Of a DNA stretch of 64,000 bases, positions 10,901 to 41,600 are shown in pieces. The notes under the pieces were generated by a model, which saw nothing but the letters and a program-made list of their open reading frames with translations, had not been told where the DNA came from and ran no database searches. The DNA is from Stylophora pistillata (Eukaryota), in contig NW_019217897.1 in assembly GCF_002571385.2 (NCBI RefSeq), positions 490,793-554,792 of the forward strand, in the 5' to 3' direction. Every line of letters starts with the position of its first letter. The first letter of the stretch is position 1. A program made the position numbers and the translations under genes.

Positions 10901-13900
10901 GGCTTTGTGAGCACACTGTGAAGCTTGCTAGTTACCTCTACATTTCCCATGATTCGTTTTGTTCCCATTTCTTAGCCTTGATGCATTTAATTTATGCCCT
11001 CTGAGTATGTTGGAGAACATTCTTCCACATTGATTATTGTTTGAACAGCACCTAAAAATGCACCAGGTTACATTGATCTTATTACATGACTTGGATCTTT
11101 TAGAGACTCAGATTCACTTGTCATCTCTAATGTAATGTAACAAAGAAGGTGAACATTTTGAGTCTGTTGTTAATTAATGCACCAGGTTATATTGATCTTA
11201 TTACATGACTTGGATCTTTTAGAGACCCAGGTTCACTTGTCATCTCTAATGTAATGTAACAAAGAAGGTGAACATTGTGAGTCTGTTGTTAATTAATGCA
11301 CCAGGTTACATTGGTCTTATTACATGACTTGGATCTTTTAGAGACTCAGGTTCACTTGTCATCTCTAATGTAATGTAACAAAGAAGGTGAACATTGTGAG
11401 TCTGTTGTTAATCTCTTGAAATGTTACATTCAGCTTACTGGAGGAAGGTTTGTTGGTCTTTGGTTACTGACGTCATTTACCTTGACATTTTACAAACATG
11501 ATCCATGAGTGTGATATCATTGAAGATGTGGCCATTTCTCATGGATTTAACAACGTTGTAAAGAGAATACCTCCGACCAATACTATTGCTAATCAGGTGG
11601 GATGAGCACAGCTTCATTTAAACTCTCTGAATTGGAATGAATTTGCAAGTTAGCTTGCTTGTTTTAAGATACCTGTCTATCTGTATGCTCCTGCGTAAGG
11701 AAATGATATTGTAGATTGATAGATTGTACATAGATCTTAGATTAGAATAATCAATGTGTAGTTGATAAAAGCCTCTCGATTCCTTTTTGAAAGTTTTATT
11801 GTCAGTTAAATTAGTGAGCCCAATTAGCATGTACCTGTACAGCTAATTACATTTGACACAAAAAAAGGTTTTTCTTCTTTTTCGTTTTTTTTTATTAATC
11901 CAAGTATATGTCGTAGTTCAATTTTATCCTTGGTTCAAATTTTATTTTCCTTTGTTTCAAACTCATTATCATACATTAACATGACCGAGAACAAAGGAAA
12001 ATAAAATTTGAACCAAGGATAAAATTGAACTACAACAGATACATATGTTATCACTTATTCACTTCTTCCTTGTACATTTTACATTTAGTGTAAGTTACGC
12101 ACAGCTGTAGTTGCAGTCGCAGTCGTAGCAATCGTTCTGATCACATAGCAGGGAACCTAAGGTGTTTAACTTCTGCCGCACTAAACTTCTTTTCCAGTTC
12201 AAGCTGAACACGCTTTGTGATCTGCTGAGACAAGAAATAGCCCAAGCAGGGTTCACGGAAGTTTTAACCTTCGCTTTGGTAAGCATGAGATGCTTTTTCC
12301 CAGATAGCTTTACCCAGTGATTTCGCGAAGCTTTGTTTGTTTCCTGTGTTTGAATGTTTTGCGTGGCTAAATGCTTCTGTTTGTCATAAGAGAAGAACAG
12401 AATTCGACTAGACCTCATTTTGGCTCTGGTGTTCTTTACGTAAATCTGTTTGTCACAAATCATGTTAAAAAATTGACGCATCAACCCGACAAGTCAGTGT
12501 TTTAGAGCTCTTCTTAGAATTGGCCTCTGTTTGTAGATCTTTGGCTACAATTTATCTGAAGTCCTAACGACCTCTCTTTTCGTTTTCCAGTGTTCCCGCG
12601 ATGATGTCTCGGAGAAACTTAAAAAGCCTTTGTCATCTTCCAAGGCTGTTCACATCGCAAATCCAAAAACACTGGAATTCCAGGTTTACTATTTTTTTTC
12701 GTATTGTCCATTGATACTTAATTTTTTTTTCACATTAATTTTAAAAGCATGACTATGTTTTCTTGTGCGAGAATCTCGCCTTTAAACCGGTGAATTAAAA
12801 ATAATAGAAATAATGGGGTTTTCTCCCGCTCTATTATTTGTACTTATGATTCTGGCTTGTTTTAAAGAACTTAGAGGTAAATCAGAACTTGGATGGTGCA
12901 AAGAGCGACCTGGTCATTTGCGCTCTGCTTTGCCTTACGCCAGTTATCACTGGGCTCTAGTGATATTTTTCTTTTTAATTGGCTGTTGCTAGGTTTTGAT
13001 CTTACGGCACTCATCAATAAGCACTTTGACCATTTCAATTCCTTGCAGGTCGCAAGAACAACACTTATGCCCGGTATCCTAAAGACCATTAGCTGTAACA
13101 AGAAGATGCCACTCCCAATGAAACTGTTTGAAATTTCAGACGTGGTACACAGTGATGATCAGAAAGGTGCAGTGCCTGCGTCTTGTTGATAATATTTGCA
13201 CATCTTATATGCTCAAAAAATAATTGAAATGATATTTGACTGCAGATGATAAAGAAACAACGAGGTGATCCTTAAATGAGTGCTACTACCATGTGACCTA
13301 CGACGCCACATTTTGGGAGCGAAGCACACCTGTTATAGTCACTGTTAAAATCTTTTTTTCTGCGGTTGTGAACAGAGTAGCTCATACTTCGTGTTTGTTT
13401 GTTTGTTTGTTTGTTTTCAAGATGTTGGTGCTCGAAATCACCGTCGCTTCTGTGCCGCGAATTACAACAAGACGCCGGGATTTGAGGTAAGATCACTGAT
13501 GCTATATGGGAGAGGTAATGATTAACTGAGCACACAAAGCCTTGTTCGTCAAGTCTCGCGGTAATTCTAGCACCTTCCCACAATTTCCCTCCGAAACTCG
13601 TTTGATATTATTTTTTACTTGTGCTTTAAGTAAAGACTTCACCACTCTTCAGGTCATTCATGGTTTGTTAGACCGCACCATGCAGCTTCTCGAAGTACCT
13701 TACGCAGAGGATAAAACATCACCACATGGATATTATCTAAAGGCTCATGAAGGTATCTGTGTACCTCCATGAAACATTATTTGAACGACCAACTGACTGA
13801 CAGACAACTAACTAACGTAATGTCTTAGTAAATGTCTCAAGTAATGCTTTATGCTTGTTTACCATCAAGCTCGTTCCCGCGTTTATTAATTTATTCATTT

Positions 13901-16188: not shown

Positions 16189-19100
16189 ATGTTGCCGCGA
16201 TTTTACGTTAGATTGGAGCATATCTTTGGTTTCCTGGCTGTGCTGTTGTCTACCATCAGCAGATCTTTGGAGGTGAGCAATACTTTTTTTGTTGTGATTC
16301 GTTTAGTTAGGTATTACAGGTCTTTTTAACAGAAAAGGGGAAACCCAACCCAGGGGTATGGATACACTATAGCTATTTTAATTCTTCAGTTTGGGGAAAC
16401 GTTTCGATAAGCTTGAATATACCGAGAATGGTCTCATTTCTTTAACTTGGGGAATTGCGCCAGTACAATTACAAACGTGTTGTGGGTTAAAATGGATTTT
16501 TAATTTTCTCCGTGAATGCGTCAAAAGCGAAGTGGACCAACTTAGATGCGCGGCATGATTATTAGGCTATTACCTGTTATGTCTAGAGTAGTGCGCACGA
16601 ACGTTGAGGCAGTCAGGAAGCTCTCACAAGACTAAGTTTTCATACAATTTTCCAATTGATGGAAAAATGCCTGGCTAAGTACTCTACAAATGATTTTCGT
16701 TTTCATTTACGAGAGTAAAAAGATAAACATTTTAAGATATTTTCAGTCTAAGGTCATATACTTTCCAAACAGTGGCTCTAAAATACCCAGAAACGAGCGT
16801 GTCTCATAGAATTCGTGTTTTAACGTTTAGGAAAATAATTCTTCCAGTCGATCTATTATTTCCTTGGCAGTCGAAAAATATGAGAATCTAATTTGTTTTG
16901 ACAGACTTGTAATCAAGTGCATTCCTTTGATGATTTATTTATTGAACCCTTTCGATGGAGAATTCCATCCAACCCATTTGGGAGTTCTTATCAAAACTGT
17001 CGGAAATGAATTCAAGATTGCATTCCCTGTGTCGATATTCAACGAAATTTAGCTTCAGAGAGATTTTGAGCGTTTGTTTTATTGAAACAGTTCGTGTCAT
17101 TTTCTTTTTCGTGCTCTGCCCGGCGTCCAGCCGTAAGCCACGAGTCGGATCAGACAGATTTTTGCAGAATTCTTCATCCTTTTATACCAGTTTTTTAAAA
17201 CATACTCCACATTTTCAAATGTCTCGTTTTCTTCTTATCCAGAACCCTGATATCCAATCTGACAGATGGAATTTGCCAGGAGAAAGTTATGAATCAGCCA
17301 TCTGGGAAAGAAGACCTTCAGTGCGTAAGGGGAGACCACCGGGTTAGTGAGCTGTCTTTGACTTCCAGCGGGAATCTCATCAGTTGATGTTTCTTTGTTC
17401 CAGATATACTTCAGAAACACCTGCTTATTCACACCCGACAACACACCCCATTCGAACAAAATTTATCTGATCGATTATTAAGGGACTGATAAAGACTGCT
17501 TTCCTTAACGTCCATCGCATACTTCATGGGTGAAATTTAAGACCCGACGAGAGTCAAACTACACTAATCTGTCATAAATACCTCGCTGTAATGCTGAAGT
17601 CCCCATACTCTTAGCGGGAGATTTTCATCTCCGGGGAAGGAGATCAAAAACGTCACGAGAAAATTATGAAATGTCAGAGTCCTTAGTCACCATTTCAAGG
17701 ATGCTTTTTCCACGAGTTTCTTCCTGTGTTTGGGATTTGATTCGTGCGTTTTGAACCAAATATTTTATAGATTCTCCAACCCTTACCTCCTCACGATGGA
17801 TTTTTGGCATACAGTGTATGAAACTTGAAAGGTCATGTTGGGTACAACTCGCTCACTTGTTCTGCTTATATTCGCCACACGTTGCATCCCCTCAAGCTTT
17901 ACTCCCGCTCCCGCCACTCGACATAGCCTTATTTGAGAGGCGAGTCCAGGTTTTCACCTGACTGATAGAGTAGTTTTCGTCCCATCATACCCGGGGGTAG
18001 ATTTTATGAAATTGGAGAAGCCAAATGCTGGGGATGGTCGACACACGTGGAGTTTACTAAAATCCAGTTGACTCGGTTGTATTACCTAAGAGGAGTGAAT
18101 ATGCCTTACGGTCACTTACCCCATGCTTCCGTTAGGCGCTTTATCAGTAAAGGACACTAATTTTCGCACAAAATGTAAAATCGGCACTGTGTGTGTTTCT
18201 CTAATTTCGCCTATAAAATTCTAACGGTGTATTTTCATATCGATAATCATCACTGAAAGACCTGAAAGAATGTGACAGTTTACATTTTCACACTTCTCGC
18301 AGAATCACCAACCTTTCATAGCGAGTGCATTACACGGCAACAGTGAAACAACTTAAAATAAGATCCTTGCTAATCATTCTTGTCTTAGTTATAGAAAGCT
18401 TGTCTTATTTTGACAGGTTGCTGCCCTCCTGAATTGTACCTTGGGTTTGGAAGCGCCACTTCATACAGTGATCATGACAGTAGTGTCACAACTGCTGATG
18501 CACCCTGCAGCAACCACGCCGACTTGGATCTACAGGAGGTTCAATTTAGGAGTGATAAATTGGGAAAGATGACTGATGCCATCACAATTGCCGTCTGGGT
18601 TAACTTGCGAACCATCCAAGGCATTCAGCCAATTCTGGTCGTAAGAGGACAAAATGGCGAGCTTCGATTTGAGGTTGCTGAAGGTCACGTTACTTGGTTA
18701 CACACCACGTTACGTTCACAAATACCAACATTTGCACTAATAAGCAGTGAACAAGTTTTAGAAAATAAATCGTGGACGCATATCGTAGCGCTATACGATG
18801 CTTACAACAGTCGCGCCGCGGTATTCGTGAACGGAAAGGAAATACTTCAGGGCCCTAGTGCTGGTGGATCACTGGAACTAACGTGGGATGAACTCCATGC
18901 TATCGGTCGATATAAAGTCAACGAGGGACTAGAGTTTAAATTGAAAGGGCTTCTTGACGAGTTCTACATCTACTTCTGTGCTCTTCCAAGAATGGTAATT
19001 CATAGACTTTTCCAAATCTGCCACATCGATGGAAAATGCGCTCCCTCGCGACCAGGCAAGTTTGAAATCATTTCGTTAGCAATCCGCTCTAATGTATTGG

Positions 19101-22100
19101 AAAACGTCAATGAGTTTAAACTCTTCAGTCTCTCTTCTCAGTTTTATCTAAACATGGCATCGATTTTGCAGTAACAGCTAATGTTCTTCATGGAATAGGA
19201 ATAGGAAAACGTTAACTAGCATATTTATTCTCGGCAATCTCCTAACACTTCGTGATATAGAGGTTGCCCTACAGGAGATACTTCCTCATTTCGGTGCAGA
19301 AAACTTTTGATGGAGCCTTTAAATATAATTCGTCCACTTTACTTTCTTTCCTAGGTCTCGATAGGGTATGTGACGTCAGGGCATTCCGTTGTTGGAATGG
19401 ACGATGCATAAGGCAGGAGTGGAAGTGTGACGGAGAGAATGACTGTGGAGACTGGAGTGATGAAATTGGATGTGGTTAGTTAATCTGCTTTCACTCCTTT
19501 TTCAGTTTTGTCTGCAGATCTAAATTAGGTTTAGTTTCATCCCTCCTCCGGTTCAGGAAGTAGCAAGGTTTGTGCTACTTCATGAACGGAGATCTCGAAA
19601 ATCCCGGCTACAAAAACGAACCTTCATTGTTTGACCTCCTCATCCAATCGTTTTCCCGTGATCAATTGGGCTATGTAAGATTAAGGTATAGCAAAGCTGA
19701 ATGACATTTTCTGATAAATAACAGCAATAATAGCATCAAGAAGTTACTCGATGTAAGAGGATTTTTTCTCATTCGATGATGATGATTTTAAATTTCCCCA
19801 ACAGATGGCTTTTGTGAGCCTGGGGAGAAATTCTCGGTCTTTCAAGGACGATGCATATCGTGCTTTTGTATGGGACGTTCTCAGAATTGTAGCAGTGCAA
19901 GAGTGTACCGTGGCAGGGTAGGTTTCAAAACCTGGTGTGATTCAAGAATTTTGAGGCCAGGAAAAAGGTGTTTATTCGTGATACACTTTGCTGATATTAT
20001 TTAATCAATTACTCCACATCTTAATAATAACTTTATTTTTTCCAGCTCGCTCTAGAATTGAAAACTGATGCCCGTCTCACTGATGTGCCATTGGTGGATG
20101 TGCATGGATCTTAAGTGTCCGGTATTACCTATAAACGGGATCCCTTTAGCAATGTGATATCAGCCCTGGTTACGTCGGAAGGAAAATTACATTTCTGGGC
20201 TTTGCCAAAAAAGTTTATGGGCAACAAAGTAAGGTTAACATCAAAGTTTGCAATGCATACTATGTCACGCTGTTGATTTAAGCAATTTTCATACTAACAG
20301 AGTTGTGTTCTTTCATTCTGTATCTTTACTGTCAATTAAACCTGAAAATTTGTACGGGTGTCGCGTCTAGGTACTGAGGGATGGCTTACTGTAGAGATTT
20401 TAATTTAGCTGGCTGTGTAAAAAATATATACCTTCTAAGAAATTGAATTGCTATATTTTTTTTATCGCAGCTATCAAGTTATGGCGGAAAACTACGTTAC
20501 ACTGTCAAGAATGTCATTGGCAATGCATCGGCGAATGAGGAAAATGTTCCATCGAGAAAAGTGAGAAGTGCAGGAGAAATGCTCAGTTTAGAGGCTTTAA
20601 TAGACAAATATGCCACCGATGATGTCCGCGACGTAGAAGACACTGACATTGACATCGACACTGACGCATCAGGAACAGAGGACCCTTCTTTGGATGTTTC
20701 AGAAAATACTTTGTCTATTCTTACGACGCAGCTTACACCCAGTAGAGTTAAAGAAACTCCACCTATTTTACCCGAAACTAACGCAACGTCAAAACATCCT
20801 ATCAGTTCCGATGACTCCAGAAACGTCACAGAGAATTCTGGAGCCCCAACTGCAGCAACAAACTCCGCAACTGAACGAACAGGAACAAAACCTCCACCAA
20901 CCATCGACACGGGAAATATTTTGACAACACCAACTGTAGAAACAACACCCTCTGTAGAGGTTGACGGAGACACCGACCTAAATATTCTCTCGGAAAATGA
21001 AGAAACAAAAAGAGTTTTTAGGATAGTTTCCACTAGGTCCGAGCTGCCGGCAACCACAGCAACTCGACTGACGAAAGGGGAAACTGTACCTTTTCAAACA
21101 ACTCGAGCAGTTTCTGACGGGTTAATCGCGACATCGGCAACTCACACTTCTCTCACAACATCGAATCCTTTGCCTCAAAGTCGCGACGAAACAACCCCAA
21201 CTGTTTTCTTTTCATCCCTAAGTACCCCGGAACCTACCTCGAAAGCTATCGCAACTACCCCAAACACGTATGACACAACAAAGAGTGCATTAATAGGCAG
21301 TGAAGAAGCCAAAACAACATCCTCAACTTACGGCAGTGACAGTCCAACATTAGAAATGGTGACAACAATACCAGACATAGCTTACACGACAACTAATTTA
21401 ATATCCTCGAGGAGTAATTTACTAGAAACTTTTCCCTCCGAGCCTAATGCACCGAACAATGGTCAAGATGGGCCACCCACCAACGTACCTTATTCGACTT
21501 TCAGCACTTCTACAAAGACGAGACCACCAGAAACGTTTTCCACAGCACCTAGTCGAGTCACCGATATACGAGAGGATTCAACTACTGCCGCTGCAGTGCC
21601 TTCAGCTCACACCACCACGGAGCTTACTGATCATCCATTGACAGAAATGTCGCAAACTCCCCTCCCTAATACGGATCACAACAGCATCGAGAGGGCTACC
21701 ACGGAATACGTTTCAGTATCTCCACATACGTCTGGAACGACAATGATAACATCGAGTGGTGCGAATCAAGAAATAATTAACACCGAGTCGGTTTCAGCTG
21801 ACATTACTGACGTTCCTACTTCGAGAACCGCCACAAAACCAAATACGTTTCACAGTACAACTCCTGAATCAGCTGTCACCAAAAGTGATACAACTGGCAT
21901 TATATCTTCTTCCCAGTATGTTTTCAAAACCGCTTCCCATAAAATTAGGACATTGTCAGGCGAGGCGAATGATAGCGAAGATGTCATTACCACTGCGATA
22001 TCTCCTTCGGCTTACAGCAACGAACAACTTTTTTCGGAATCTTCGCCATCCGTAACAGATTCGTCTTTAACCAAAATATCACCGGACGGTGAAGATACAT

Positions 22101-25100
22101 TAACTGCCTCTGATCTTCTTCCTGCTTCTATCACACACTCGCCTTCCACACAAATACCAGATACTTCTCATACAAGGAGAGTATCAGACACCTCTTACAC
22201 ATTAACAACTTCAGTCGGTGATCGAGATGAAACCACTTACATCCCGAGATCTTCAGACTACAAAACTGATATTCCTTCTTCAAAAACCGTGAGATCGACC
22301 ACAGACCCTTCTTTCACAACAACCAGTGAATCAACCAATGTCCAATTTGAAACAAGTACCTCGATGCCTCCCTTATCCTACAGTACTGAGAGATCACCAG
22401 ATGTATTTCACTTAACAACGAAAAAATCAACGGATAGTCCAGATGGACCTCTTACCGCCGATGTACAAGTACCAACTACTTCTTACAATTTGACGGGTAC
22501 CTCTACTGCTGGCAAAGATGAAGCAACCACTTTCACTGATCTATCAGTTATTAGAACGGAAATGCCAGCTGCTAAGAAAGAAATAACAATAGCACCTAGA
22601 ACGGATGCAACTTCTGTAGATGGTCAAGATGAAACAACCACTGCTTTTCCTTCTTCAGCCTATCGCAGCAGCATTCCGCCCTTCAAAACCGGAATAACTG
22701 GCGCTGCAGATGAAAAAAGGAACACTGTACCTCCTACGACGTACAGTTCCAACCAAGTAGCCCCAGAATACACCAAACAGTTACCAGATGGAACAGACAC
22801 AACATCTGTCGATGGTCAAGATGAAACAACCACTGCCTTCCCTTCTTCAGCCTACCGCAGCGGCATTCCACCCTCCAAAACCGGAATAACTGGCACTGTA
22901 GATGAGGAAAGGAACACTGTACCTCCTACGACGCACAGTTCCAACCAAGTAGCCCCAGAGTACACCAAACAGATACCAGATAGAACAGACACAACATCTG
23001 TCGATAATCAAGATGAAACAACCACTGCCTTTTCTTCCTCACCTTATGGCAGCAGCATTCCACCCTTGGAAACCGGAATAACTGACACAGTAGATGAAAC
23101 AAGCACCACTGTGCCCCCTACGACGTACAGTTCTAACCGGATAGCCCCAGAATACACCAAACAGGTACCAGATAGAAGAGACACAACATCTGTCGATGGT
23201 CAAGATGAAACAACCACTGCCTTTCCCTCTTCAGCCTATAGCAGCAGTATTCCACCCTCGAAAACTGGAATAACTGACACAGTAGATAAAACAAGCACCA
23301 CTGCACCCCCTACGACATACAGTTCTAACCAGGTGGCCCCAGAATACACCAAACAGGCACCAGATAGAACAGACACAACATCTATCGAAGGTCAAAATGA
23401 AACAACTACTGCCTTTCCTTCTTCAGCCTATAGCAGTAGCATTCCACCCTCGCAAACCGGAATAACTGACACAGTAGATGAAACAAGCACCACTGTACCT
23501 CCTACGACATACATTTCTAATCAGATAGTCCCAGAATACACCAAACAGGTACCAGGTACATCTTACACAGAAAGAGGTGTACCTACTGATAGCGTAAATG
23601 TCAAAATCATGACTGTAGTTCCATCATCCTATATAAGGGAAGGACCAACAACAGACTCTGTAACAACCAAGTCGAGTACGTCTTATTCGAGTACAACACC
23701 GGTCCCTGGTGAAGATGGAACAGCCACTAACGTGTATCCTACACCCCACAGTACTGCTGGACCTTCCTCGAAAACGACAAGAAAGAAACCAAGCACGTCA
23801 CCTTCAGACGTGGTGTTAGTCGATCGCGGAGATGGCTCGACCACCAAGCTTCCTTCTTCAGGTTATAGTACTGACACGACTACCTTGACAAATGAAAAAT
23901 CAACGATGCCTGATACATTTTACACCCCAACGAAATCGTCAACAGGTCAAATCGATGGTGGGGATGAAGTGACAACTGCTGCACCTGCTTCATACCACAG
24001 TACCGATAGAGTCACTCGGAAAACGGTGTCAGCTATCTCCGGCGAATCCCACACGAAAACAGTGGTAGCCACCACTAGTTACGGAAAAAAAACCGATGGA
24101 ACGGGGAAACCAACCTCAGAATCCGTATCGACCTTATCTGTTGCCTCCTCTACAGGTCAAACATCGGTCGATGGTGATGATGGAATAACCACTGAAATCC
24201 CTCCTTCAGCATACAGTACCGTTGAGACTACCCCGAGAACAGATGGGGTAGTAACGGTCGATCGCGAAGATATATTGATCAGTACTGTCCCTCCTTCAGG
24301 CTACAGTACTGACACAAATATCATGACAACCGTAGCAACGATACCAGCAACATTTCATTCATCAATGAAAGTGCCGACCGACCAGACCGGCACTAGCGAT
24401 GAAAGAACCACCACTGCGCCCTCCACATCCCGCAGTACTGAGACAACGATGGCACCTACCACTGGTGACGAAACAGCAGCATACGTAGCAGAGAAGCAGA
24501 CCTCAGAAACCCTGACAACATTATCAAGTGTGTCTTACGCAAGCGCACCACCTGTCTATGGTGAGGGTGAAACAAACACTGGCGAGCCTTCTTCTGGCTA
24601 CGGTGCTGATGGGACTACCACGACAGTAGCTAAGCTGCCAAGCTCTCGCACAACGGCGACAGCAACTGCAGAGGCATCGAAAACGAAAAAGATAATGGCC
24701 ATCATAGGTAACGAGGAAACAACCAAGGCTGTGCCTAACGTGACTTACAGCAGAAACAGCCCTTCCTTTACAACAGTGTCGACAATCACGAATATATTAC
24801 AAACAAAATCAAGGGTACTGACAGGAACAAATGATTTTATCACCACATCTGTGCCTTCGACAGCCTACGGTACTTCGACGGCTACTACGGAATCCACATC
24901 GTCTACCGCGACATCGACAAGAGAACCGACGTCGCAAAAAACAACACAAGGTTCGTGTTTATTTAAATACAAAAAAAGACACTCACTCAACGACATTATG
25001 AATTATCGTATTGCTTACCAGGTTATTTAATGGCTCTGTACCGTTTACTCCTTTAATTTTGTGCACTTCAGGTGTTTCCAATCTTAAAGTTACCCTTTTT

Positions 25101-26579
25101 ACAGGTGATGTTTCAGAGATTAAGATTCTTTTCCATGAAATAGTGTCTTTTAACGACCACAATAACTTGTAGAGTCGGCGAAGATTTTTATCCAGCAAAT
25201 AACATGTTCGCCACTTAGTGTTGTACATCCCGTTGCTTGTGTAATGACGATGGGACTGTGCGTTGCGCTCCACTCTCTATCGATGATTTTCTTATTTTTG
25301 AAGATAACGAAAGAGAGTTAGTGTCCCGTGCACTGGTGGAAAACAATAATTCTACTTATGAAAAGAAAATATTCATATTAACATGATAACTTCTGTACAT
25401 GACACACAAGCAGATCCCTCTCCTTTTAACATCGCTGAAATGTTAGATTCACTGATCATTATGATGCAATGATCTCTTAGATATAACACCCTCAACCCCT
25501 GTAACTCAGCCCACAGCCTCTCCACCTTCCATGGTTGGGAAAGGAACAGAAGCAGTACGGATCATGGTATGGATTATATAAAAAAGTTTGTAGTGCATTC
25601 GAACTACAAGGCTAATTCTAGAAAATCGTTCAGGTGACTTCAATCATCCATGGCGCTTGAGAACCCAAGTAGATATCATCTGGAGAATCAAGTGAAAGTA
25701 ATGCTCAGCTGATGCGTTTAGATCAGGCAAAGTTTGAGTGATTGCAAAATAAACAGGGAAAGAGAGTTCGTGCATGATAAATGAATAATTTTTCTTTCCA
25801 ATATTTCACTTAAAGGGAAGAGATGGAAGCGTAATTGTCTATCATGGAATCCAACCGGGCTCTGGGAATGACAAGGCTACTATTGAGATCAAGCTCACTG
25901 AGGTATGAACAGTTATACTGAAATTAGAAGATATTTTTATCTAAATCATTTTACTAGTGGAGTAAGTCGTTGTGCAAGAACATTTGACCATATTTTTAAT
26001 TACCTCGCGGATTAAGGATAGATTGTTTATTCCGCTCTTTCTTAGGAGGGATGGCGTTCAACTGATGGAGTGCCAGCCTCCAGGGAAAGTTTCATGAGGG
26101 TATTGTCAGATGTTCAGGGAATATTCATAAGGGCCTCTTATGACCATCGACGCTCCACTTTAGTCGAGTCAGTTAGGTACGTGATTACTTCGTTGTGACT
26201 ACAACGGGAGATATCTATTTATTTAAGAGTCTAACGCTGACGTCTTTTTACTCTTTGGCAAGCATTAAAGATGTCTCTCTCGATGTGGGATCTCAAGAAG
26301 ACGCAGGCCACGGCAAAGCGTTATTGGTAGAGAAGTGCGAATGCGCAGAAGGCTACGATGGACTTTCCTGCGAAGTAAGTTATCGATCCAGTTTTCATTT
26401 TATCTATGAAGCAAGGAATCAAAATTTGTATAAAGCAATCCCCACCTAGTCCCTAGTCGCAGCTATCTTTAAATTCGCTCTGACGAAGGGCTAACGCTCA
26501 AAACGTCAACTTTTTAACTCTTTATGGTGGCCAATTTACAATTTCAACTTAGGTAATATTTCCAAATTACCTTGTTACC

Positions 26580-29600: not shown

Positions 29601-32600
29601 TTACAAGAGGATAATCTCGATGGCTGTACACCATGTTTTTGCAGTGGAGTTTCTGACAGCTGCGAAGGTGCTAAGCTAAACAAAACTCAGGTTAGCAACA
29701 AATGCATCCATTGTTATTGAGGAATTGAAGACAAAATCGAATATTAGAGTTTCAGTGGTTTTGAGGGTTGAGGCTTTAATTCTGAAGGAGTCGTAGGAGT
29801 GCACAGAACTCCTTTAAACTACAATAATGTGTATTCTATAAAGTAAAAACTATTACAACATATAGCATATACTGAAAAAAACGAAAGGATGTACTTTTAC
29901 GTTCGTATAGATTATGATGTGACTACTCATTACTGCTATATTGTTGCAGCATCCAATTCGTTAAAACGATTTCCTGCAACGCAACTTAATTGAATCACTG
30001 TCGTATTAATACAGTGATAAACGTCCTCTTTTTTTAGATACGTACTACATTCTCTGTGGATGAGCTGAAAAATTTTACTCTGGTCACATCAGACCGTACC
30101 CCAGTAAACTCTTCAGATCTCTTTGTTAATCCCCTGACGAAGGAACTGACTTTTCAGTCTTTTGTGGAGGAGGGTATTCAGGGGGAGATTTTATACTGGA
30201 AACTGCCTCGAACATACACTGGGAATAAGGTAAGTTAAGAAAGACTTTAAAACGCGGGCGTGAACGAAATTTAAAGTTTTTCTCATATTTCTGTTTACAG
30301 CTTACGTCATATGGAGGTTTTTTTAGCTTTGTTGTCTCGCACGAGGCTAGTTCTGATGGAAAAACACTGTACGCGCCAGATATCATCTTAATTGTGAGTA
30401 CGACCAATAAGTAAAACAGACTAGGCCATCTACCCAGAAATTCATAGCCTCCCAGTCAAAATTATGACTTTGGAATGTCATTAATTTTTTTTTGTTTTTT
30501 GTTTTTTGTTTTTTTTGTTTTTTTGTTTTTTTGTTTTTTTATCTAGGGGACAGACATAACACTTCATCACTACAAAAGAAGTCCTACAGGAAACAACCGG
30601 GAAGGAGGTTACCAAGTCATGTTTGAAGAGGTTTAAGGCTCAATTCTTTTACTATCTCCTGAAGGTCACTTTAATTTACTTGATACGGAAATAAAAAAAA
30701 GGATTTCTGACATTAAATCTCACTCTTTCAGAACTCCTGGACTGACAGCACCAATAGAGAAATATCACGAGACCAAGTTATGAAGGCTTTGCACCATATC
30801 GAGGCACTTTTGATCAGAGCTTCTTATACTACTGGGATGCTTCAGACAACGTATGATCAACAAAATACTTTTCTATCCATTAGTTATTCGTTTGTTTTTG
30901 CACTAATTGCCCTTTCAAGCCTCTTTAGCAAGTGAAAATTAACAATTTGGCTTAAAAAAGTTCAATTTGCGTTTACTTATGGAAATAACGGTTTTGTGTG
31001 AGCTGTTCTTTCGAAAAACATTTCCATTTTCATTAGTTGTTAAATATTTGATCCAAACTTGTAGAAAATTTGGATGGTGGTAGAAACATGCTTCCATGAA
31101 ACACTTTGTTGTGAATAACACGAGTATCCTTTCCCATTCCTGATTTCCCATCCTCTGAAAGAGCCACCTGTAGAACTTTTAGGAACACAAATCAACTCCA
31201 GACCCTAATTTCAATTTGATATCCTGTCTCTTTTCTTGGTTTGTGTATGTGTTCTTTGCTTTCTTTCGCCCCAGCCTTCGGGAAGTTTCCATGGACACTG
31301 CAACTAATGCGGTCACTAATCAGCCTCGTGTTAGCTCGGTTGAGCGATGCGCATGTCCAGCAGAGTACCAAGGTTTATCTTGTGAGGTAAGTTCGACTCA
31401 CCTTGATAACATCCCTTTCAGAAAACTGGTCACACAATCCTTGATGTTTCCTTTGAATTCTCATCAATAGCATATTTGTACACCACGTTAATTTTTTTGT
31501 CGTGAAAACGTTACAAATTTGTCTTCCTTTTCAAAAAAGATAAACCCGAAAAAATAATTTAGCATTCAATGATACTCGCACTCCGAGTTCGATGGATAAG
31601 TTGCTGCCTTGTTGCAGCCTTGTTACTGTTTTGTCACTAAAAACTGTCTATTCAGTGATAACTATTCTTTCTTACGTTCGCCAGTCTTGTAAAGCAGGTT
31701 ACTATCGATCACGTGGTGATCCACACTTTGGCGACTGCATTAAGTGTGACTGTAACGGGCACTCTCGCGATGAGTACTGTGATCCTGAAACAGGAGAATG
31801 CAAGGTAAGCCAGTCCAATATATCATGTGGCCTCATGATTACCCAGAGGCTGGACATATTACTTTTCTTGATGTTTACTTCAATAGAATTGCCAGCACAA
31901 CACAGAAGGGTTTCGCTGTGATAAGTGCGTGACTGGTTTCTATGGAAACGCAACAATTGGCCAACCATCAGATTGTAAGCCTTGTCCTTGCCCCATGACA
32001 TCACCACCAAACAGGTAAGAAGGGTGAAATTAATAGAACTTCTCATGAAACTTGATCCCTTGATAACTTGTGCGCCGTGCTGGCTCGAAACAATTTCGAC
32101 CTCTCCGAAACTTCCGGCATACATTTACGGAATTACCCACCGAAACTCGAAACTCTCGATAATTCATAAAGGGGGTAAGTCTCTAAAGAAACCGTGGTGT
32201 TGGTGTTGATAATGTAAATTGGCCACCGTAAAAGTTTAATAACTAAACCTTTACGCTAGCCAATTTACATTATCAATTTAGTTGATAAAGCCAAATCATC
32301 TCGATAATTCAGTTCATGTTTCTCTTCAGTCATTAAGAAATCCTTTATAACTCGCACCAGGTTTGTCCTTTCGAGTCAAAACAAACAGAATTGTAATCTA
32401 AAACATTAAAAGATATTTTTAGCAGCTGTGCATTTTTTCTTTACTTTACATATTGAACATTTTTATTGTCTTTGAATTCTCTTCCAGGTTCAGTCCTACA
32501 TGTTTCATGGCAGAGGATGGAGAACCGACCTGCGATGCATGTCCACCAGGATATGGGGGTAGAAACTGCGACAGGTGTGTTAAAGAAGAAAAAAGTTCTT

Positions 32601-38600: not shown

Positions 38601-41600
38601 CATACAGCATTTCGGAAATAGCCTATTGTTTTCAGTCTTTTAAAAAGCTTGAGCATGAGAGTAATCTTCGCAGTAAAGAACACTACTTAAGCAGAAGTAA
38701 AAATAAAGCCTGGAAAAAATTCAGGCTCGAACGGGAGTTGAACCCATAACCTTTGCGTCGATACCGGAGCATAAAAAAAATTGGCTTCTAAACTTGATTT
38801 TCACCGATCATTTGAGGTCTATTTGATAATTCCTTTAGGAGACCGCTGAAGTAAATTCCCTTTTGCAAAAGAGTTGAGAATTGGGTTCTTTGAAACTTTC
38901 TCCAGGTTCTCTCTCTCAAGGCGACCTGTTTTATACCAAAGGAAGAAACGATTCGGATGCGATTTAAAAAAAGCTTAGCAATGGCGGAATCTTGATGGAA
39001 AATTCTTCCAGAAAACATTTTTTCTCGTACCTTGCTATACTACGCAAAATGTCCTTAGTTCCTGCAACTTGGTAATCTCTTAATTACACTTCAAATTTAT
39101 ATTTCAGATTGGCTTGCGCATCGCCCTGTTGGACGGTCCAAACTACTTACGTCTCTCGGACTTATCACAGGACTCTATTATAAATTCTGGCTACAAAATA
39201 GAGGATGATCCGGGACATTATGTTTATAAGTTTGACAAACCACCGGCAAAGACCTATTACTGGTTTTTGGGAGAGGAATTTAGAGGGGACATGGTGAGTT
39301 CACTCTGTAGCTTTCCAACCTCGACTAGTCGATTCCTTTTGCCGTTGACTTGTTGGCGACGGAGGCGAGTCACCTTTCAAAACGTCTTAAACTCCTGTTG
39401 TTCGTGTTCACTTGATAACGTGGTATAGGCACTGCTAACTACGGCCTTCAGTAGGAGCTCTGAAAGCTCCACCATCTATTTTTGTTTTCCGCAGAGGGAA
39501 CTCCGACCGTAAACATCCCTTTCCCGCTTCATATGATAACGTTTCTACTCGTAAAGATCAAAGGTAAATTGACTGATCTCTTTTGATTTGTTTAGATCAC
39601 AAGCTATGACGGTATCTTACGATACACAGTTTCTCACGAAATGCAGCCCGGTGGTGAGCTGACCTCTGAAATTGACGTCCAGTTGAAGGTATTATTTGAA
39701 TTTTAACTCACCAATAAGTGGTGCTGTCGTTCGTAAATTCACGGTGCATGCTCTTGATTCTTGAATGCTCTGTAATGTTAATCAAACGTTTTTAGTCCAA
39801 TCTTCATTCTTGGTCTCGTTTTGTTTGTCGGTCTAGTTTCGAAAATTATTGTGCTGGAGGTATCAGTTCCAAGTTTTGCGCTTTTCAGACAAATCTGGTT
39901 TCCGTTGCCACTAGTGTAATTTCGTGTTTTGCGCAGAAACGCCAAACGTTCACAGCTACAATTATTATCAATTTTCTTTCTTTTTAAAGCGAATAGATTA
40001 TTGCGGCTGTGTGAAAAGTTGCGCTTCTCGTCGGTGTATTGCGCTCAAACGCTGTTTTTTCCAATAGAAAAAAAAAAAAAAAAAAAAAAAAACAGGAAAG
40101 AGCAGAAGAACTCGCTTCCAATCAAAAACGCATAATGCAGATTGCCTTGGCTAAGAAAATGGAATTATTTCTAAAATGGGTCGCACACCTGCAACTCGGT
40201 AAAAGAACCAGAGAAGCGTACCCGCTAATTTTAAGTTAACAGTAACGCTTCTTTTTCGATTTACATCTGAATTTGTTTCGATGGTGTGTATGGCGAATTT
40301 TTTTTTTAGGGAAGAGGGAGAGTTCTAATATTTAATCGTAGAAGAAAACGAGAGGCAGGAAAAACATTTACAGAGGGCCTTAAACTATCAGAGGTGAGGA
40401 GTTAACCAAATAGTCCATGCAACGTTACAGACCTATTACATGTTCCAAGCAAGCAATCCATTTTTCGACATCGAAGGCAATCTGTTGACTACAGGTATAT
40501 CCGAACGAATAATCTTGTCAGTTGCTCTGATTCATGGTGTTAGTCATCAATTGAAGGTATTTAAAGTTAAAGATAACATTTTTTGTCAGGAGGAAGGAAC
40601 ATAACAACTACGTACAAGCTAGTCTCTTTTCTGTAAAAGTCAAAATATCTTGTTCAATCATACAGGGTTGGCTGAGGTACCCGGATAACGCTAGAACGAC
40701 CAGAGATGTTGTGATGACAGTTTTGTCCGCTGTGGAAAGCATCTTGGTCCGTGCGACATACAGTACAACTACTACACAAGCCAGGTCACAATTTAGTTAC
40801 TTTAACTGTAACATATCTCTTTTTACTCTACTGTAACATGTTCACTCATAATTTTACACCCTCTAATCAGTGAAATACTTCATATTCCATATATTATTTA
40901 CACTAATATTTACTGCAAGAACAAAATAACTTACGCAACTAAGATTACACGCAACGCTATAAAAAGGTTCTCGAGTTCCCTGTGTTACCTTTTTTTTACC
41001 TGTAGGTAGCCTTGCGTTCACGATGTGAATCAGATCAATAACGTTATTTTTATTTTTCACCAGCCTTTATGCAGTCAATTTGGAGAAAGCTGTACCTCAA
41101 GAAACGGGTCATAGAAAAGCTGAGAAAATCGAACTATGCACATGTCCACCGGAGTACACTGGAACATCTTGTCAGGTAATCTTAGAAGCTCACAATAGAA
41201 AATAGTTATGTGAAGCGTTAGAGAATTCTAGCATTCGTTTATTTCGTTGTTTCAAATCTCGAAGACGCACCTTTGTTCGTTTGAACTTCTTTCTACTTAA
41301 GAAAAATGAGATTCGATGCTCGACTTTTCGAACTTATAAAGAATTTTTTTCACTCAGTGAAAGTTGATAAGCAAGCTTTTATTTTGGAATATGTGTAGAG
41401 GTCCATTCATATGCAATGACAAATTAAAAAATCTGAGCAATGTCTTGCTTAGACGTTACGCAAATCCTTCTGTACGAAGTGCGGTCATAAGACCATGTCA
41501 GTTTTGGTATCATTTTATTTTGCAGCGCTGTGCTCGTGGATACACTCGGACTTACCCTGCAGGCTCAGATTTCTCCCCTTGTGTTCCATGTACTTGTAAT

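What the first reader, a model, noticed from the sequence alone, without database searches (positions are those of the whole stretch)
20471..25902. A ~1,500-aa mucin inserted inside the first laminin-B domain of perlecan
Seen: LamB1 reads ...[11 protein letters not shown] / [12 protein letters not shown], then ~1,500 aa of S/T/P-rich sequence (4.48-kb exon plus exon 25481-25566), then resumes with EAVRIM / [11 protein letters not shown] / EGW...[21 protein letters not shown] / SIKDVSLD...VEKCEC. In LamB2 and LamB3 of the same gene the equivalent loop is only ~12 aa ([31 protein letters not shown]). Splice phases are consistent throughout. Inference: a globular domain folds around a giant O-glycosylated loop, giving a mucin-perlecan hybrid that could link basement membrane or mesoglea to mucus or skeletal matrix. 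I do not know this architecture from bilaterian perlecans.
Basis: partly seen in the sequence, partly recalled or inferred. Interest (0 to 1): 0.85.

Follow-up and report, generated by a model that had tools for sequence, protein, structure and literature searches.

The report
Giant mucin loop inside coral perlecan
In the coral Stylophora pistillata, the basement-membrane protein perlecan carries a transcribed stretch of about 1,490 sugar-acceptor-rich residues inside a surface loop of one small folded domain; other stony corals share this layout, and the papers I searched do not describe it for perlecan.

Summary
The window is from Stylophora pistillata. Exon 20471-24950 is one open frame of 1,493 codons: 35.5% Ser+Thr, 8% Pro, no Cys or Trp, and five 64-aa tandem repeats.

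**Where it sits.** The exon starts with a laminin-B (L4) strand, [12 protein letters not shown]. The domain resumes in exon 25481-25566 (EAVRIM) and the exons after it. Pfam places the break between Laminin_B profile positions 33 and 39.

**Size of the insert.** The matching exons of LamB2 and LamB3 are 93 nt each. Here the equivalent is 4,566 nt, which is 1,491 extra codons plus one new intron.

**Transcription.** Coral RNA contigs show all three splice joints. In two of the three studies laid, depth over the mucin exon is similar to the flanks and zero in the introns. No contig skips the insert.

**Conservation.**
- The insert is syntenic and open in Pocillopora (dN/dS 0.66, in-frame indels).
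- It is also open in three contigs of a second stony-coral lineage. One comes from a Cyphastrea metagenome.
- An octocoral perlecan has about 65 extra residues in the same loop.
- All 516 other LamB domains surveyed have a normal loop.

**Function.** O-glycosylation, a conserved RxxR-S site and a DASG site are inferences, not shown. I rate this a new variant of a known kind.

The parts
19804..19917 (+). First half of the laminin-EGF (LE) module that hosts LamB1 (...[19 protein letters not shown])
   Evidence: tblastn with the Pocillopora model P0240. The loose end of an X1 RNA contig at 20045 matches 19887-19916, so this exon is spliced to exon A.
20046..20228 (+). LamB1 exon A, the N-terminal part of the domain (...[15 protein letters not shown]). 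The reference has an in-frame TAA at 20112-20114.
   Evidence: RNA contigs of X1 and X6 read G at 20112, giving GAA (Glu). Pocillopora has CAA.
20471..24950 (+). Giant exon. It holds the LamB1 strand [12 protein letters not shown], then a conserved acidic head of about 80 aa ([21 protein letters not shown]), then the Ser/Thr/Pro-rich mucin-like body.
   Evidence: Open frame. Composition. RNA contigs from three studies, with joints at both ends. 100% identical to NCBI XP_022788382.1.
20555..20572 (+). S-R-K-V-R-S, an RxxR-Ser motif that is invariant in five stony-coral sequences. It is a candidate proprotein-convertase site. It overlaps a cryptic GTGAGA donor at 20561.
   Evidence: Alignment A1 and DNA comparison. 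The GT is lost in the second lineage (CTTAGA) while the peptide is kept.
20663..20686 (+). D-A-S-G flanked by acidic residues ([11 protein letters not shown]). D, A, S and G are invariant in five stony-coral sequences. It is a candidate glycosaminoglycan attachment site.
   Evidence: Alignment A1 and motif list. The function is inferred only.
22597..23555 (+). Five tandem copies of a 192-nt (64-aa) unit. Pocillopora has about one copy.
   Evidence: Tandem Repeats Finder, 88% matches. Stylophora/Pocillopora alignment.
24951..25480 (+). Phase-1 intron inside the insert. It has no counterpart in the LamB2 or LamB3 exons.
   Evidence: GT..AG joint in X1 and X2 contigs, with zero depth in those runs. 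Exon comparison. The intron is also present in Pocillopora.
25481..25566 (+). End of the insert ([22 protein letters not shown]) plus the LamB1 strand EAVRIM, which resumes the domain.
   Evidence: Joints on both sides. Its end matches the ends of the LamB2 and LamB3 exons (PDIILI, EIDVQLK).
25816..25902 (+). LamB1 exon D ([11 protein letters not shown]...)
26046..26176 (+). LamB1 exon E (EGWRSTDG...IFIRASY...)
   Evidence: Pfam Laminin_B positions 76-113, E 1.5e-8. The X1 and X2 contigs run on into it.
26263..26374 (+). End of LamB1 and second half of the host LE module (...[18 protein letters not shown])
30301..30393 (+). LamB2 exon homologous to 20471...25566, 93 nt with a 13-aa loop (comparison)
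39596..39688 (+). LamB3 exon homologous to 20471...25566, 93 nt with a 12-aa loop (comparison)

Best explanation
The apparently single perlecan (HSPG2-like) gene of Stylophora pistillata encodes, as its main or only detectable mRNA form, a protein with a split first L4/laminin-B domain. About 1,491 residues are inserted in the loop between the strand SYGGxLxYxV and the next strand.

**Origin.** The insert arose inside one ancestral 93-nt exon. It grew by sequence expansion, which is still going on: the 64-aa unit has 5 copies here and about 1 in Pocillopora. It also acquired one intron.

**Structure (inferred).** The two domain halves still fold into one beta-sandwich. The insert projects from it as a Cys-free, acidic, Ser/Thr-rich and probably disordered chain.

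**Function (inferred).** The body is probably densely O-glycosylated and so works like a mucin brush: space-filling, hydrating and protease-shielding in the basement membrane or mesoglea.

The conserved non-mucin head may add a convertase cut (RxxR|S). A cut there would turn the closed loop into a tethered tail. It may also add a glycosaminoglycan site (acidic-DASG-acidic). Together these would supply a glycan-bearing module to a perlecan that has a ConA-like domain rather than a vertebrate-type SEA/GAG domain I at its N-terminus.

The confidence given is for the architecture (a transcribed mucin-like insert inside LamB1 of perlecan). The glycan function is about 0.6, and cleavage and GAG attachment about 0.2-0.3 each.
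For: **Shown: sequence and domain position**
- The frame, phases and splice sites are as described.
- Laminin_B profile 1-33 lies before the insert and 39-136 after it.
- In the solved perlecan fragment 9i5a, the two flanks align to chain residues 124-140 and 157-372, so the insert replaces a 16-residue loop.

**Shown: transcription**
- RNA contigs show all three joints.
- In X1 and X2, intron depth is zero and mucin depth is similar to the flanks: X1 9.6-24 against 8-24, and X2 5.8-9.9 against 2.3-6.8.
- An upstream LE exon is spliced to exon A.
- The NCBI models XP_022788382.1 and XP_027049481.1 both include the mucin.

**Shown: conservation**
- The Pocillopora orthologue is syntenic and collinear at about 65-70% aa identity.
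- dN/dS is 0.66 over 1,232 codons. There are no stops, and in the 5' 2.1 kb that I checked every internal gap is a multiple of 3. Exon identity is 77-83% against 70-78% for the gap-rich introns.
- A second stony-coral lineage is represented by L002, L004 and L005. L005 comes from a Cyphastrea metagenome (bioRxiv 10.1101/391565).
- L004 and L005 have the same upstream exons, then an open mucin exon of at least 462 and at least 848 aa.

**Shown: rarity**
- In 516 LamB domains of 206 perlecans and laminins, the loop spacing is 16-30 residues. Here it is about 1,512.
- The octocoral Dendronephthya perlecan has about 65 extra residues in the same loop.

**Supporting model**
- The N half (Pocillopora) and C half (Stylophora) were predicted to assemble with ipSAE 0.82, against a best control of 0.00. 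There were about 306 contacts, partner pLDDT was 81-82, and the runs agreed on at least 96% of contacts.
- That mark was reached by 51 of 78 solved complexes and 2 of 108 mismatched pairs.

**Head motifs**
- SR..RS, VRD and DASG are invariant in five stony-coral sequences.
Against: - Glycosylation, cleavage and GAG attachment are all untested.
- Pro content (8%) is low for a classic PTS mucin domain.
- dN/dS of 0.66 shows weak constraint on the residues themselves.
- Contigs cannot exclude a minor isoform without the mucin. The one raw-read run gave no reads at all, so it was no test.
- The reference assembly has an in-frame TAA upstream in exon A, so in that individual one allele may be null, or the base may be an error.
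- The complex-prediction pass may be memory of the solved perlecan L4 fold, and it used halves from two species.
- I obtained no sequence from complex-clade corals (Acropora, Porites), sea anemones or hydrozoans, so the age of the insert is bounded only loosely.
- The octocoral insert comes from a predicted gene model that I could not check against DNA.
Confidence: 0.85

Rival explanations
1. The mucin is an optional, alternatively spliced segment. The common perlecan isoform has a compact LamB1, made either by using the GTGAGA donor at 20561 joined to 25816 (in frame) or by skipping both exons 20471-24950 and 25481-25566 (4,566 nt, in frame).
For: Both routes keep the frame. GTGAGA is a good donor and Pocillopora keeps it. 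Assembled contigs drop rare variants, and no raw reads were laid.
Against: - No contig shows either joint.
- An X2 contig reads from exon A through 20561 to 20752.
- Mucin depth equals flank depth in X1 and X2.
- Both routes delete the EAVRIM strand, which the LamB2 and LamB3 exons place inside the same ancestral exon. The skipping route also removes the SYGG strand.
- The GT is lost in the second coral lineage while the peptide RxxRS is kept.
Confidence: 0.1
2. It is a separate mucin gene, as NCBI names it ('mucin-2-like'), that merely overlaps or borrows perlecan exons. Alternatively, this perlecan copy is a decaying pseudogene, as the in-frame TAA might suggest.
For: NCBI's Stylophora model starts at MGNK, just after the TAA, and ends at 28440. 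The reference reads TAA at 20112-20114. The Pocillopora model ends by reading into the intron after the mucin exon.
Against: - RNA contigs splice the upstream LE exon to exon A, exon A to the mucin, and the mucin to about 3.6 kb of downstream exons.
- Two RNA studies read GAA instead of TAA.
- The Pocillopora model joins signal peptide, ConA-like domain, LDLa, LE and the LamB1 N half to the mucin.
- The frame is kept open in at least five coral taxa.
- The locus is single copy, and no other locus in the genome has three tandem LamB domains.
Confidence: 0.04
3. The insert is translated but is only a tolerated, nearly neutral disordered loop with no glycan role. It would be a by-product of repeat expansion at a permissive hairpin.
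For: - dN/dS is 0.66.
- Repeat copy number differs between genera.
- Identity between the two coral lineages is low, 36-44% in the head and not alignable further on.
- The head folds poorly on its own (pLDDT 52).
Against: - Frames of 848 to 1,493 codons stay open in several lineages, with in-frame indels only.
- Composition is maintained in both lineages, with Ser+Thr at 35-37% and no Cys.
- A recurring DGxDE-TTT-PSSAY motif is found 9 times against 0.16 expected. The pattern was chosen after seeing the data.
- Head motifs are invariant.
Confidence: 0.15

Closest known systems
Perlecan / HSPG2 domain III (LE and L4/laminin-B modules; solved fragment PDB 9i5a/9i5b)
   Same: The gene order is LDLa, then three LE/L4 units, then Ig repeats, then LamG/EGF. 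The LamB1 C half plus LE aligns to bilaterian perlecans at 44-51% identity, and to 9i5a at E 9e-52.
   Different: The loop is 16 residues in 9i5a and gives a spacing of 16-30 residues in 516 surveyed domains. Here it holds about 1,491 extra residues. The N-terminus has a ConA-like (Laminin_G_3) domain and one LDLa. No SEA domain was found in the Pocillopora or octocoral models.
Ser/Thr-rich mucin-like regions of other basement-membrane proteins (agrin, alpha-dystroglycan; Nematostella collagen XVIII-like with a 'Mucin-like insertion', PMC12549020)
   Same: A Cys-free, Ser/Thr/Pro-rich, probably O-glycosylated stretch inside a basement-membrane protein. The Nematostella case shows that cnidarian matrix proteins do acquire such inserts.
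   Different: By my own knowledge, the inserts in agrin and dystroglycan lie between folded modules. This one lies inside a beta-sandwich domain, so the two halves must find each other across about 1,500 residues.
Nested domains (the L4 module is itself inserted in an LE module)
   Same: The principle is the same: a loop whose two ends lie close together tolerates a large insertion. Here there are three levels, with the mucin in L4 and L4 in LE.
   Different: The guest is not a folded domain. It is a long low-complexity chain with variable repeat number.
Gel-forming and membrane mucins (MUC2-type PTS domains), the name NCBI gave the protein
   Same: Composition (Ser+Thr 35.5%, Pro 8%), tandem repeats whose copy number varies between species, and absence of Cys in the repeat region.
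   Different: No VWD, C8, TIL, CK or SEA domains were found. There is no sequence relative outside corals and no paralogue in the genome. It is not a MUC2 homologue.

Membership tests
Perlecan (HSPG2 / UNC-52 / Trol orthologues) | Domain III: LE modules interrupted by three laminin-B (L4) domains | tested here: met
   Three LamB units lie at 20046-26374, about 30179-31386 and about 39596-41175, with LE exons between them.
Perlecan (HSPG2 / UNC-52 / Trol orthologues) | LDL-receptor class A module(s) upstream of domain III | tested here: met
   An LDLa exon lies at 19354-19473. Pfam Ldl_recept_a hits the Pocillopora orthologue P0240 at 284-318. Only one LDLa was seen, and no Ig module between it and domain III.
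Perlecan (HSPG2 / UNC-52 / Trol orthologues) | Domain IV: a long run of Ig modules downstream | tested here: met
   Ig-like exons run from 44231 to at least 53955, matching the Ig repeats of the octocoral perlecan P0055.
Perlecan (HSPG2 / UNC-52 / Trol orthologues) | Domain V: LamG modules separated by EGF modules at the C-terminus | tested here: met
   Exons at 54155-56978 match the C-terminal LamG/EGF part of a sea-star perlecan.
Perlecan (HSPG2 / UNC-52 / Trol orthologues) | Best reciprocal similarity to perlecans rather than laminins | tested here: met
   Apart from one amphioxus LE-array protein, the top hits of the LamB1 C half plus LE are perlecans at E about 1e-160. Laminins score far lower. 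The best PDB hit is perlecan. A formal tree was not built.
Perlecan (HSPG2 / UNC-52 / Trol orthologues) | Heparan/chondroitin sulfate chains on the core protein | not testable with these tools
   Only a candidate site was found: the conserved acidic DASG motif.
Laminin_B (Pfam PF00052) domain, for LamB1 specifically | Full-length match to the profile | tested here: met
   The match is in two pieces: profile 1-33 (P0240 406-438) and profile 39-136 (P0001 1521-1622). Both pass the curated cut-off. The halves are predicted to assemble with ipSAE 0.82, against a best control of 0.00.
Mucin (PTS/mucin-like domain in the functional sense) | Long Ser/Thr/Pro-rich, Cys-poor region, usually with tandem repeats | tested here: met
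   Ser+Thr 35.5%, Pro 8.3%, no Cys, and five 64-aa repeats. Pro is on the low side.
Mucin (PTS/mucin-like domain in the functional sense) | Dense O-glycosylation of that region | not testable with these tools
   No glycoproteomic data were available.
Gel-forming mucins (MUC2 family, as the NCBI name implies) | VWD-C8-TIL assemblies and a C-terminal cystine knot | tested here: not met
   Pfam finds only Laminin_B and laminin-EGF in P0001, and LDLa plus Laminin_B in P0240.

The most novel reading that the evidence does not exclude
Stony-coral perlecan is made as a two-chain molecule. A convertase cuts the conserved RxxR|S site about 20 residues into the L4-1 loop. The domain halves stay together through the beta-sandwich and the disulfides of the host LE module. 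The ~1,470-residue chain then hangs from the domain as a free-ended glycan brush, carrying O-glycans and, at the DASG site, a GAG chain. That would be a new way of building the glycan-bearing arm of perlecan, replacing the vertebrate domain I. It may be ancestral to anthozoans, because an octocoral has RRSRR in the same loop.
Probability: 0.2. Interest if true: 0.8.

Novelty: new variant of a known kind. Interest (0 to 1): 0.66.

Why it matters
**A gap in what is known about perlecan.** Perlecan is a core basement-membrane proteoglycan of animals, and how early-branching animals give it glycans is poorly known. In the Nematostella study (PMC4398486), the sea-anemone perlecan was reported to lack the SEA/GAG domain I.

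**What this locus offers.** It shows a different and very large candidate glycan carrier, built into a loop of a folded domain. The carrier is kept open across at least two stony-coral families, and it makes a concrete, testable suggestion about glycan attachment.

**An extreme natural example for protein architecture.** The insert is about 1,500 disordered residues in a domain of about 140 residues.

**A practical annotation point.** Public annotation splits and misnames the gene in both species:
- Stylophora: 'mucin-2-like'.
- Pocillopora: 'uncharacterized protein'.

As a result, matrisome and skeletal-proteome surveys of corals will miss or misassign coral perlecan.

Tried and rejected
**Runs and searches that gave nothing useful**
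- The raw-read RNA run X22 laid no reads on the stretch, so junction use could not be counted. This is no test.
- The third protein search, with octocoral LamB1, returned only bilaterian perlecans and laminins in its top 120. No further cnidarians appeared. The tool's length window also excludes very long proteins.
- The HMMER search of 1.84 billion representatives with 1,200 aa of the insert found only coral sequences. One hit, P0239, is a bisulfite-like Logan contig and I discarded it.
- The ESM Atlas gave no usable hit.
- Folding the conserved head alone gave a low-confidence, mostly unstructured model with one short helix.

**Readings tested and set aside**
- Alternative donor at 20561: I considered it and it is not supported.
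- Origin from a duplicated mucin gene or mobile element: there is no other copy in the genome.
- Skeletal-matrix role: no paper in the library names either accession, and acidity is moderate (D+E 12%).

**Flawed numbers I do not use**
- My first dN/dS figure for exon A was spoiled by the stop codon shifting the alignment.
- The pooled LamB1-exon figure from that call includes exon A, so I do not use it either.

- I did not build or search a joined exon model of my own. Where a spliced protein was needed I used NCBI's models as returned by the search tools (P0001, P0240).
- Proteins over 1,200 aa could not be folded whole, so no single-chain model of the split domain was made.
Full report
**What is in the sequence.**

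Exon 20471-24950 has a strong acceptor (ttttttttatcgcag|CTA) and a GT donor (CAAG|gttcgt). It is one open frame of 1,493 codons plus one base. The other five frames of the same stretch contain 48-97 stops. From base composition, the chance of an open frame this long is about 1e-32.

The product begins [12 protein letters not shown]. It is 21.2% Thr, 14.3% Ser, 8.3% Pro, 12.3% Asp+Glu and 7.2% Lys+Arg, with no Cys or Trp. It contains five 192-nt (64-aa) tandem repeats at 22597-23555.

The remaining base of the split codon joins exon 25481-25566. That exon encodes (D)ITPST...[10 protein letters not shown] and ends in phase 0. Next come 25816-25902 ([11 protein letters not shown]...), 26046-26176 and 26263-26374.

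**It is a split laminin-B domain.**
- Exon 26046-26174 alone hits Pfam Laminin_B positions 76-113 (E 1.5e-8).
- In NCBI's own spliced model of this locus (P0001 = XP_022788382.1, 'mucin-2-like', 100% identical to the exon), profile positions 39-136 match residues 1521-1622.
- In the Pocillopora damicornis model (P0240 = XP_027049481.1), profile positions 1-33 match residues 406-438. The insert therefore lies between profile positions 33 and 39.
- Against solved structures, the flanks align to a perlecan fragment (9i5a) at chain residues 124-140 and 157-372. The insert replaces a 16-residue loop.

Where a spliced protein was needed, I used these public models as the tools returned them.

**Exon homology shows how it arose.**

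The LamB2 exon (30301-30393, [31 protein letters not shown]) and the LamB3 exon (39596-39688, [31 protein letters not shown]) are each 93 nt, phase 0 to phase 0. In LamB1 the same boundaries enclose 20471-24950 plus 25481-25566. That is 4,566 nt, also phase 0 to phase 0.

So 4,473 nt (1,491 codons) and one intron (24951-25480) were added inside one ancestral exon. The extra sequence has no paralogue elsewhere in the assembly, and the locus is single copy.

**It is transcribed and spliced as predicted.**

I laid four runs on 20040-26030.
- The polyA RNA run X1 and the RNA-like run X2, from two different studies, cover the whole mucin exon. Both have zero depth in the bins that lie wholly within the introns: 20240-20439 and 25240-25439 for both, and 25040-25239 as well.
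- A third run, X6, covers most of the exon. It also shows some intron signal, so it counts for less.
- Joints 24950>25481 and 25566>25816 appear in X1 and X2. Joint 20228>20471 appears in X2.
- The X2 contig with that joint runs on to 20752. It therefore passes through GTGAGA at 20561, the only early donor that could give an in-frame compact domain.
- A 5,310-nt X1 contig starts in the mucin at 23467. It crosses both joints and continues about 3.6 kb into downstream exons.
- An X1 contig also links exon A to the upstream LE exon (19887-19917).
- Mucin depth is about equal to flank depth in X1 and X2.
- The raw-read run X22 laid nothing, so minor isoforms cannot be excluded.

**The gene is perlecan.**

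Within the window the gene has these parts:
- a signal exon at about 16177;
- a ConA-like domain at 18416-19057;
- one LDLa at 19354-19473;
- three LE/L4 units up to 43516;
- Ig repeats from 44231 to at least 53955;
- LamG/EGF exons at 54155-56978.

Apart from one amphioxus LE-array protein, the best hits of the LamB1 C half plus LE are bilaterian perlecans at E about 1e-160 and 44-51% identity. Elsewhere in the genome, Laminin_B hits lie only on four other contigs, and none of them shows three tandem copies.

**The insert is conserved in Pocillopora.**

P0002 comes from a TARA coral metagenome and sits in the same 90% cluster as the P. damicornis protein. Its locus L001 is syntenic over 24 kb and holds every LamB1 exon. 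The comparison with Stylophora gives:
- The mucin exon is collinear at about 65-70% aa identity, with about one copy of the 64-aa unit instead of five.
- dN/dS is 0.66, with dS 0.30, over 1,232 codons.
- There are no stops, and in the 5' 2.1 kb that I checked every internal gap is a multiple of 3. Exon identity is 77-83%, against 70-78% for the gap-rich introns.

**The insert is conserved in a second stony-coral lineage.**

A scan of 1.84 billion representative proteins found a second, much more distant lineage at 36% identity (P0238, locus L002). A DNA-pattern scan of JGI metagenomes found two more contigs of it, L004 and L005.

Those two contigs carry the ConA-like domain (about 60% identical to Pocillopora), the LE half and the LamB1 N-half exon upstream. 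A mucin exon follows, open to the contig end for at least 462 and at least 848 aa. L005 comes from a metagenome that a preprint calls 'Cyphastrea sp. 2' (10.1101/391565). That is a coral genus outside the family of Stylophora and Pocillopora (family placement from my own knowledge).

**Outside stony corals.**

The perlecan-like protein of the octocoral Dendronephthya (P0055) has about 65 extra residues in the same LamB1 loop, and normal loops in its LamB2 and LamB3.

I built a local profile and surveyed 516 LamB domains from 206 perlecans and laminins, mostly bilaterian. The spacing across this loop is 16-30 residues, with a median of 22. Here it is about 1,512.

**Can the domain still fold?**

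I gave the N half (Pocillopora P0240 333-434) and the C half (Stylophora P0001 1514-1644) as two chains. They were predicted to assemble with ipSAE 0.82 in three runs, against a best control of 0.00. There were about 306 contacts, partner pLDDT was 81-82, and the runs agreed on at least 96% of contacts. That mark was reached by 51 of 78 solved complexes and 2 of 108 mismatched pairs.

Because a perlecan L4 structure is solved, this pass shows likeness to the fold rather than independent proof. It also mixes two species.

**The head of the insert.**

The first 80 or so residues are not mucin-like (Ser+Thr+Pro 26%), and they carry motifs that are invariant in all five stony-coral sequences:
- S-R-x-x-R-S;
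- Y....VRD;
- D-A-S-G flanked by acidic residues.

The GT of the cryptic donor that overlaps RKVRS is lost in the second lineage while the peptide is kept. Selection therefore acts on the peptide, not the donor. The octocoral has RRSRR at a similar place.

By my own knowledge, RxxR is the minimal furin-type motif, and an acidic-flanked Ser-Gly is the usual GAG acceptor context. Both readings are inferences. Folded alone, the head is mostly unstructured (pLDDT 52).

**Known or new?**

Full-text searches found no paper that describes a mucin or other large insert in a perlecan L4 domain, and none that names either accession. The Nematostella perlecan paper (PMC4398486) does not mention one.

A Nematostella matrisome study notes a 'Mucin-like insertion' in a collagen XVIII-like protein (PMC12549020). 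That is a parallel case, but by my reading the insert there lies between modules.

Public annotation hides the architecture. The Stylophora model starts just after the reference's in-frame TAA and is named 'mucin-2-like'. The Pocillopora model stops by reading into the intron after the mucin exon.

**Verdict.**

This is a new variant of a known kind.
- Mucin-type glycosylation is the most likely function, at about 0.6.
- Cleavage at RxxR|S and a GAG chain at DASG are about 0.2-0.3 each.
- A minor mucin-less isoform remains possible.

Noticed in passing
window 20112-20114: The reference reads TAA in frame in LamB1 exon A. RNA contigs from two studies (X1, X6) read G at 20112, giving GAA (Glu), and Pocillopora has CAA. 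This is either a nonsense allele or an assembly error. It explains why NCBI's model starts at MGNK and is called 'mucin-2-like'.
   Followed up: partly
L002 871-873: The second-lineage contig has a single in-frame TAG in the mucin exon, and the frame runs on for about 350 more codons. A sister contig's protein (P0256) reads Glu there. This is again a G-to-T difference that turns a Glu codon into a stop.
   Followed up: partly
window 18416-19473; P0240 1-318; P0055 230-521: Coral and octocoral perlecans start with a ConA-like (Laminin_G_3) domain followed by LDLa. The octocoral model also has an Ig module before domain III. No SEA domain was found in the Pocillopora or octocoral models. L004 and L005 also carry the ConA-like domain.
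   Followed up: partly
P0240 C-terminus; window 24951-25030: The Pocillopora NCBI model ends by reading 16 codons into the intron after the mucin exon. The Stylophora intron would give 27 codons and then a stop. X1 and X2 show no depth in the bins that lie wholly inside that intron, so a truncated isoform is not supported there.
   Followed up: partly
window 22597-23555 against L001 about 12180-12371: The copy number of the 64-aa unit differs between the genera: five in Stylophora and about one in Pocillopora. RNA contigs break inside the repeats. Copy number may also vary within the species.
   Followed up: no
window 21900-24800; L002, L004, L005: A degenerate motif DGxDE-TTT-x-PSSAY[ST] recurs through the insert's body in both coral lineages. 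In Stylophora it occurs 9 times against 0.16 expected from shuffles. The pattern was chosen after seeing the data.
   Followed up: partly
L003 (Logan SRR15101732): This contig looks like the Pocillopora mucin head with C-to-T conversion throughout, probably from a bisulfite library. It enters protein databases as a spurious Phe/Ile/Leu-rich 'protein' (P0239).
   Followed up: no
P0003, P0122-P0149: Amphioxus proteins of 2,500-4,000 aa, made almost only of laminin-EGF modules, outscore true perlecans in region searches because many repeats each match. They are not orthologues.
   Followed up: no
window 25566-25972 in run X6: The random-primed metatranscriptome X6 has contigs that run across unspliced exon-intron borders. 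It holds pre-mRNA or DNA and is weaker evidence of splicing than X1 and X2.
   Followed up: no
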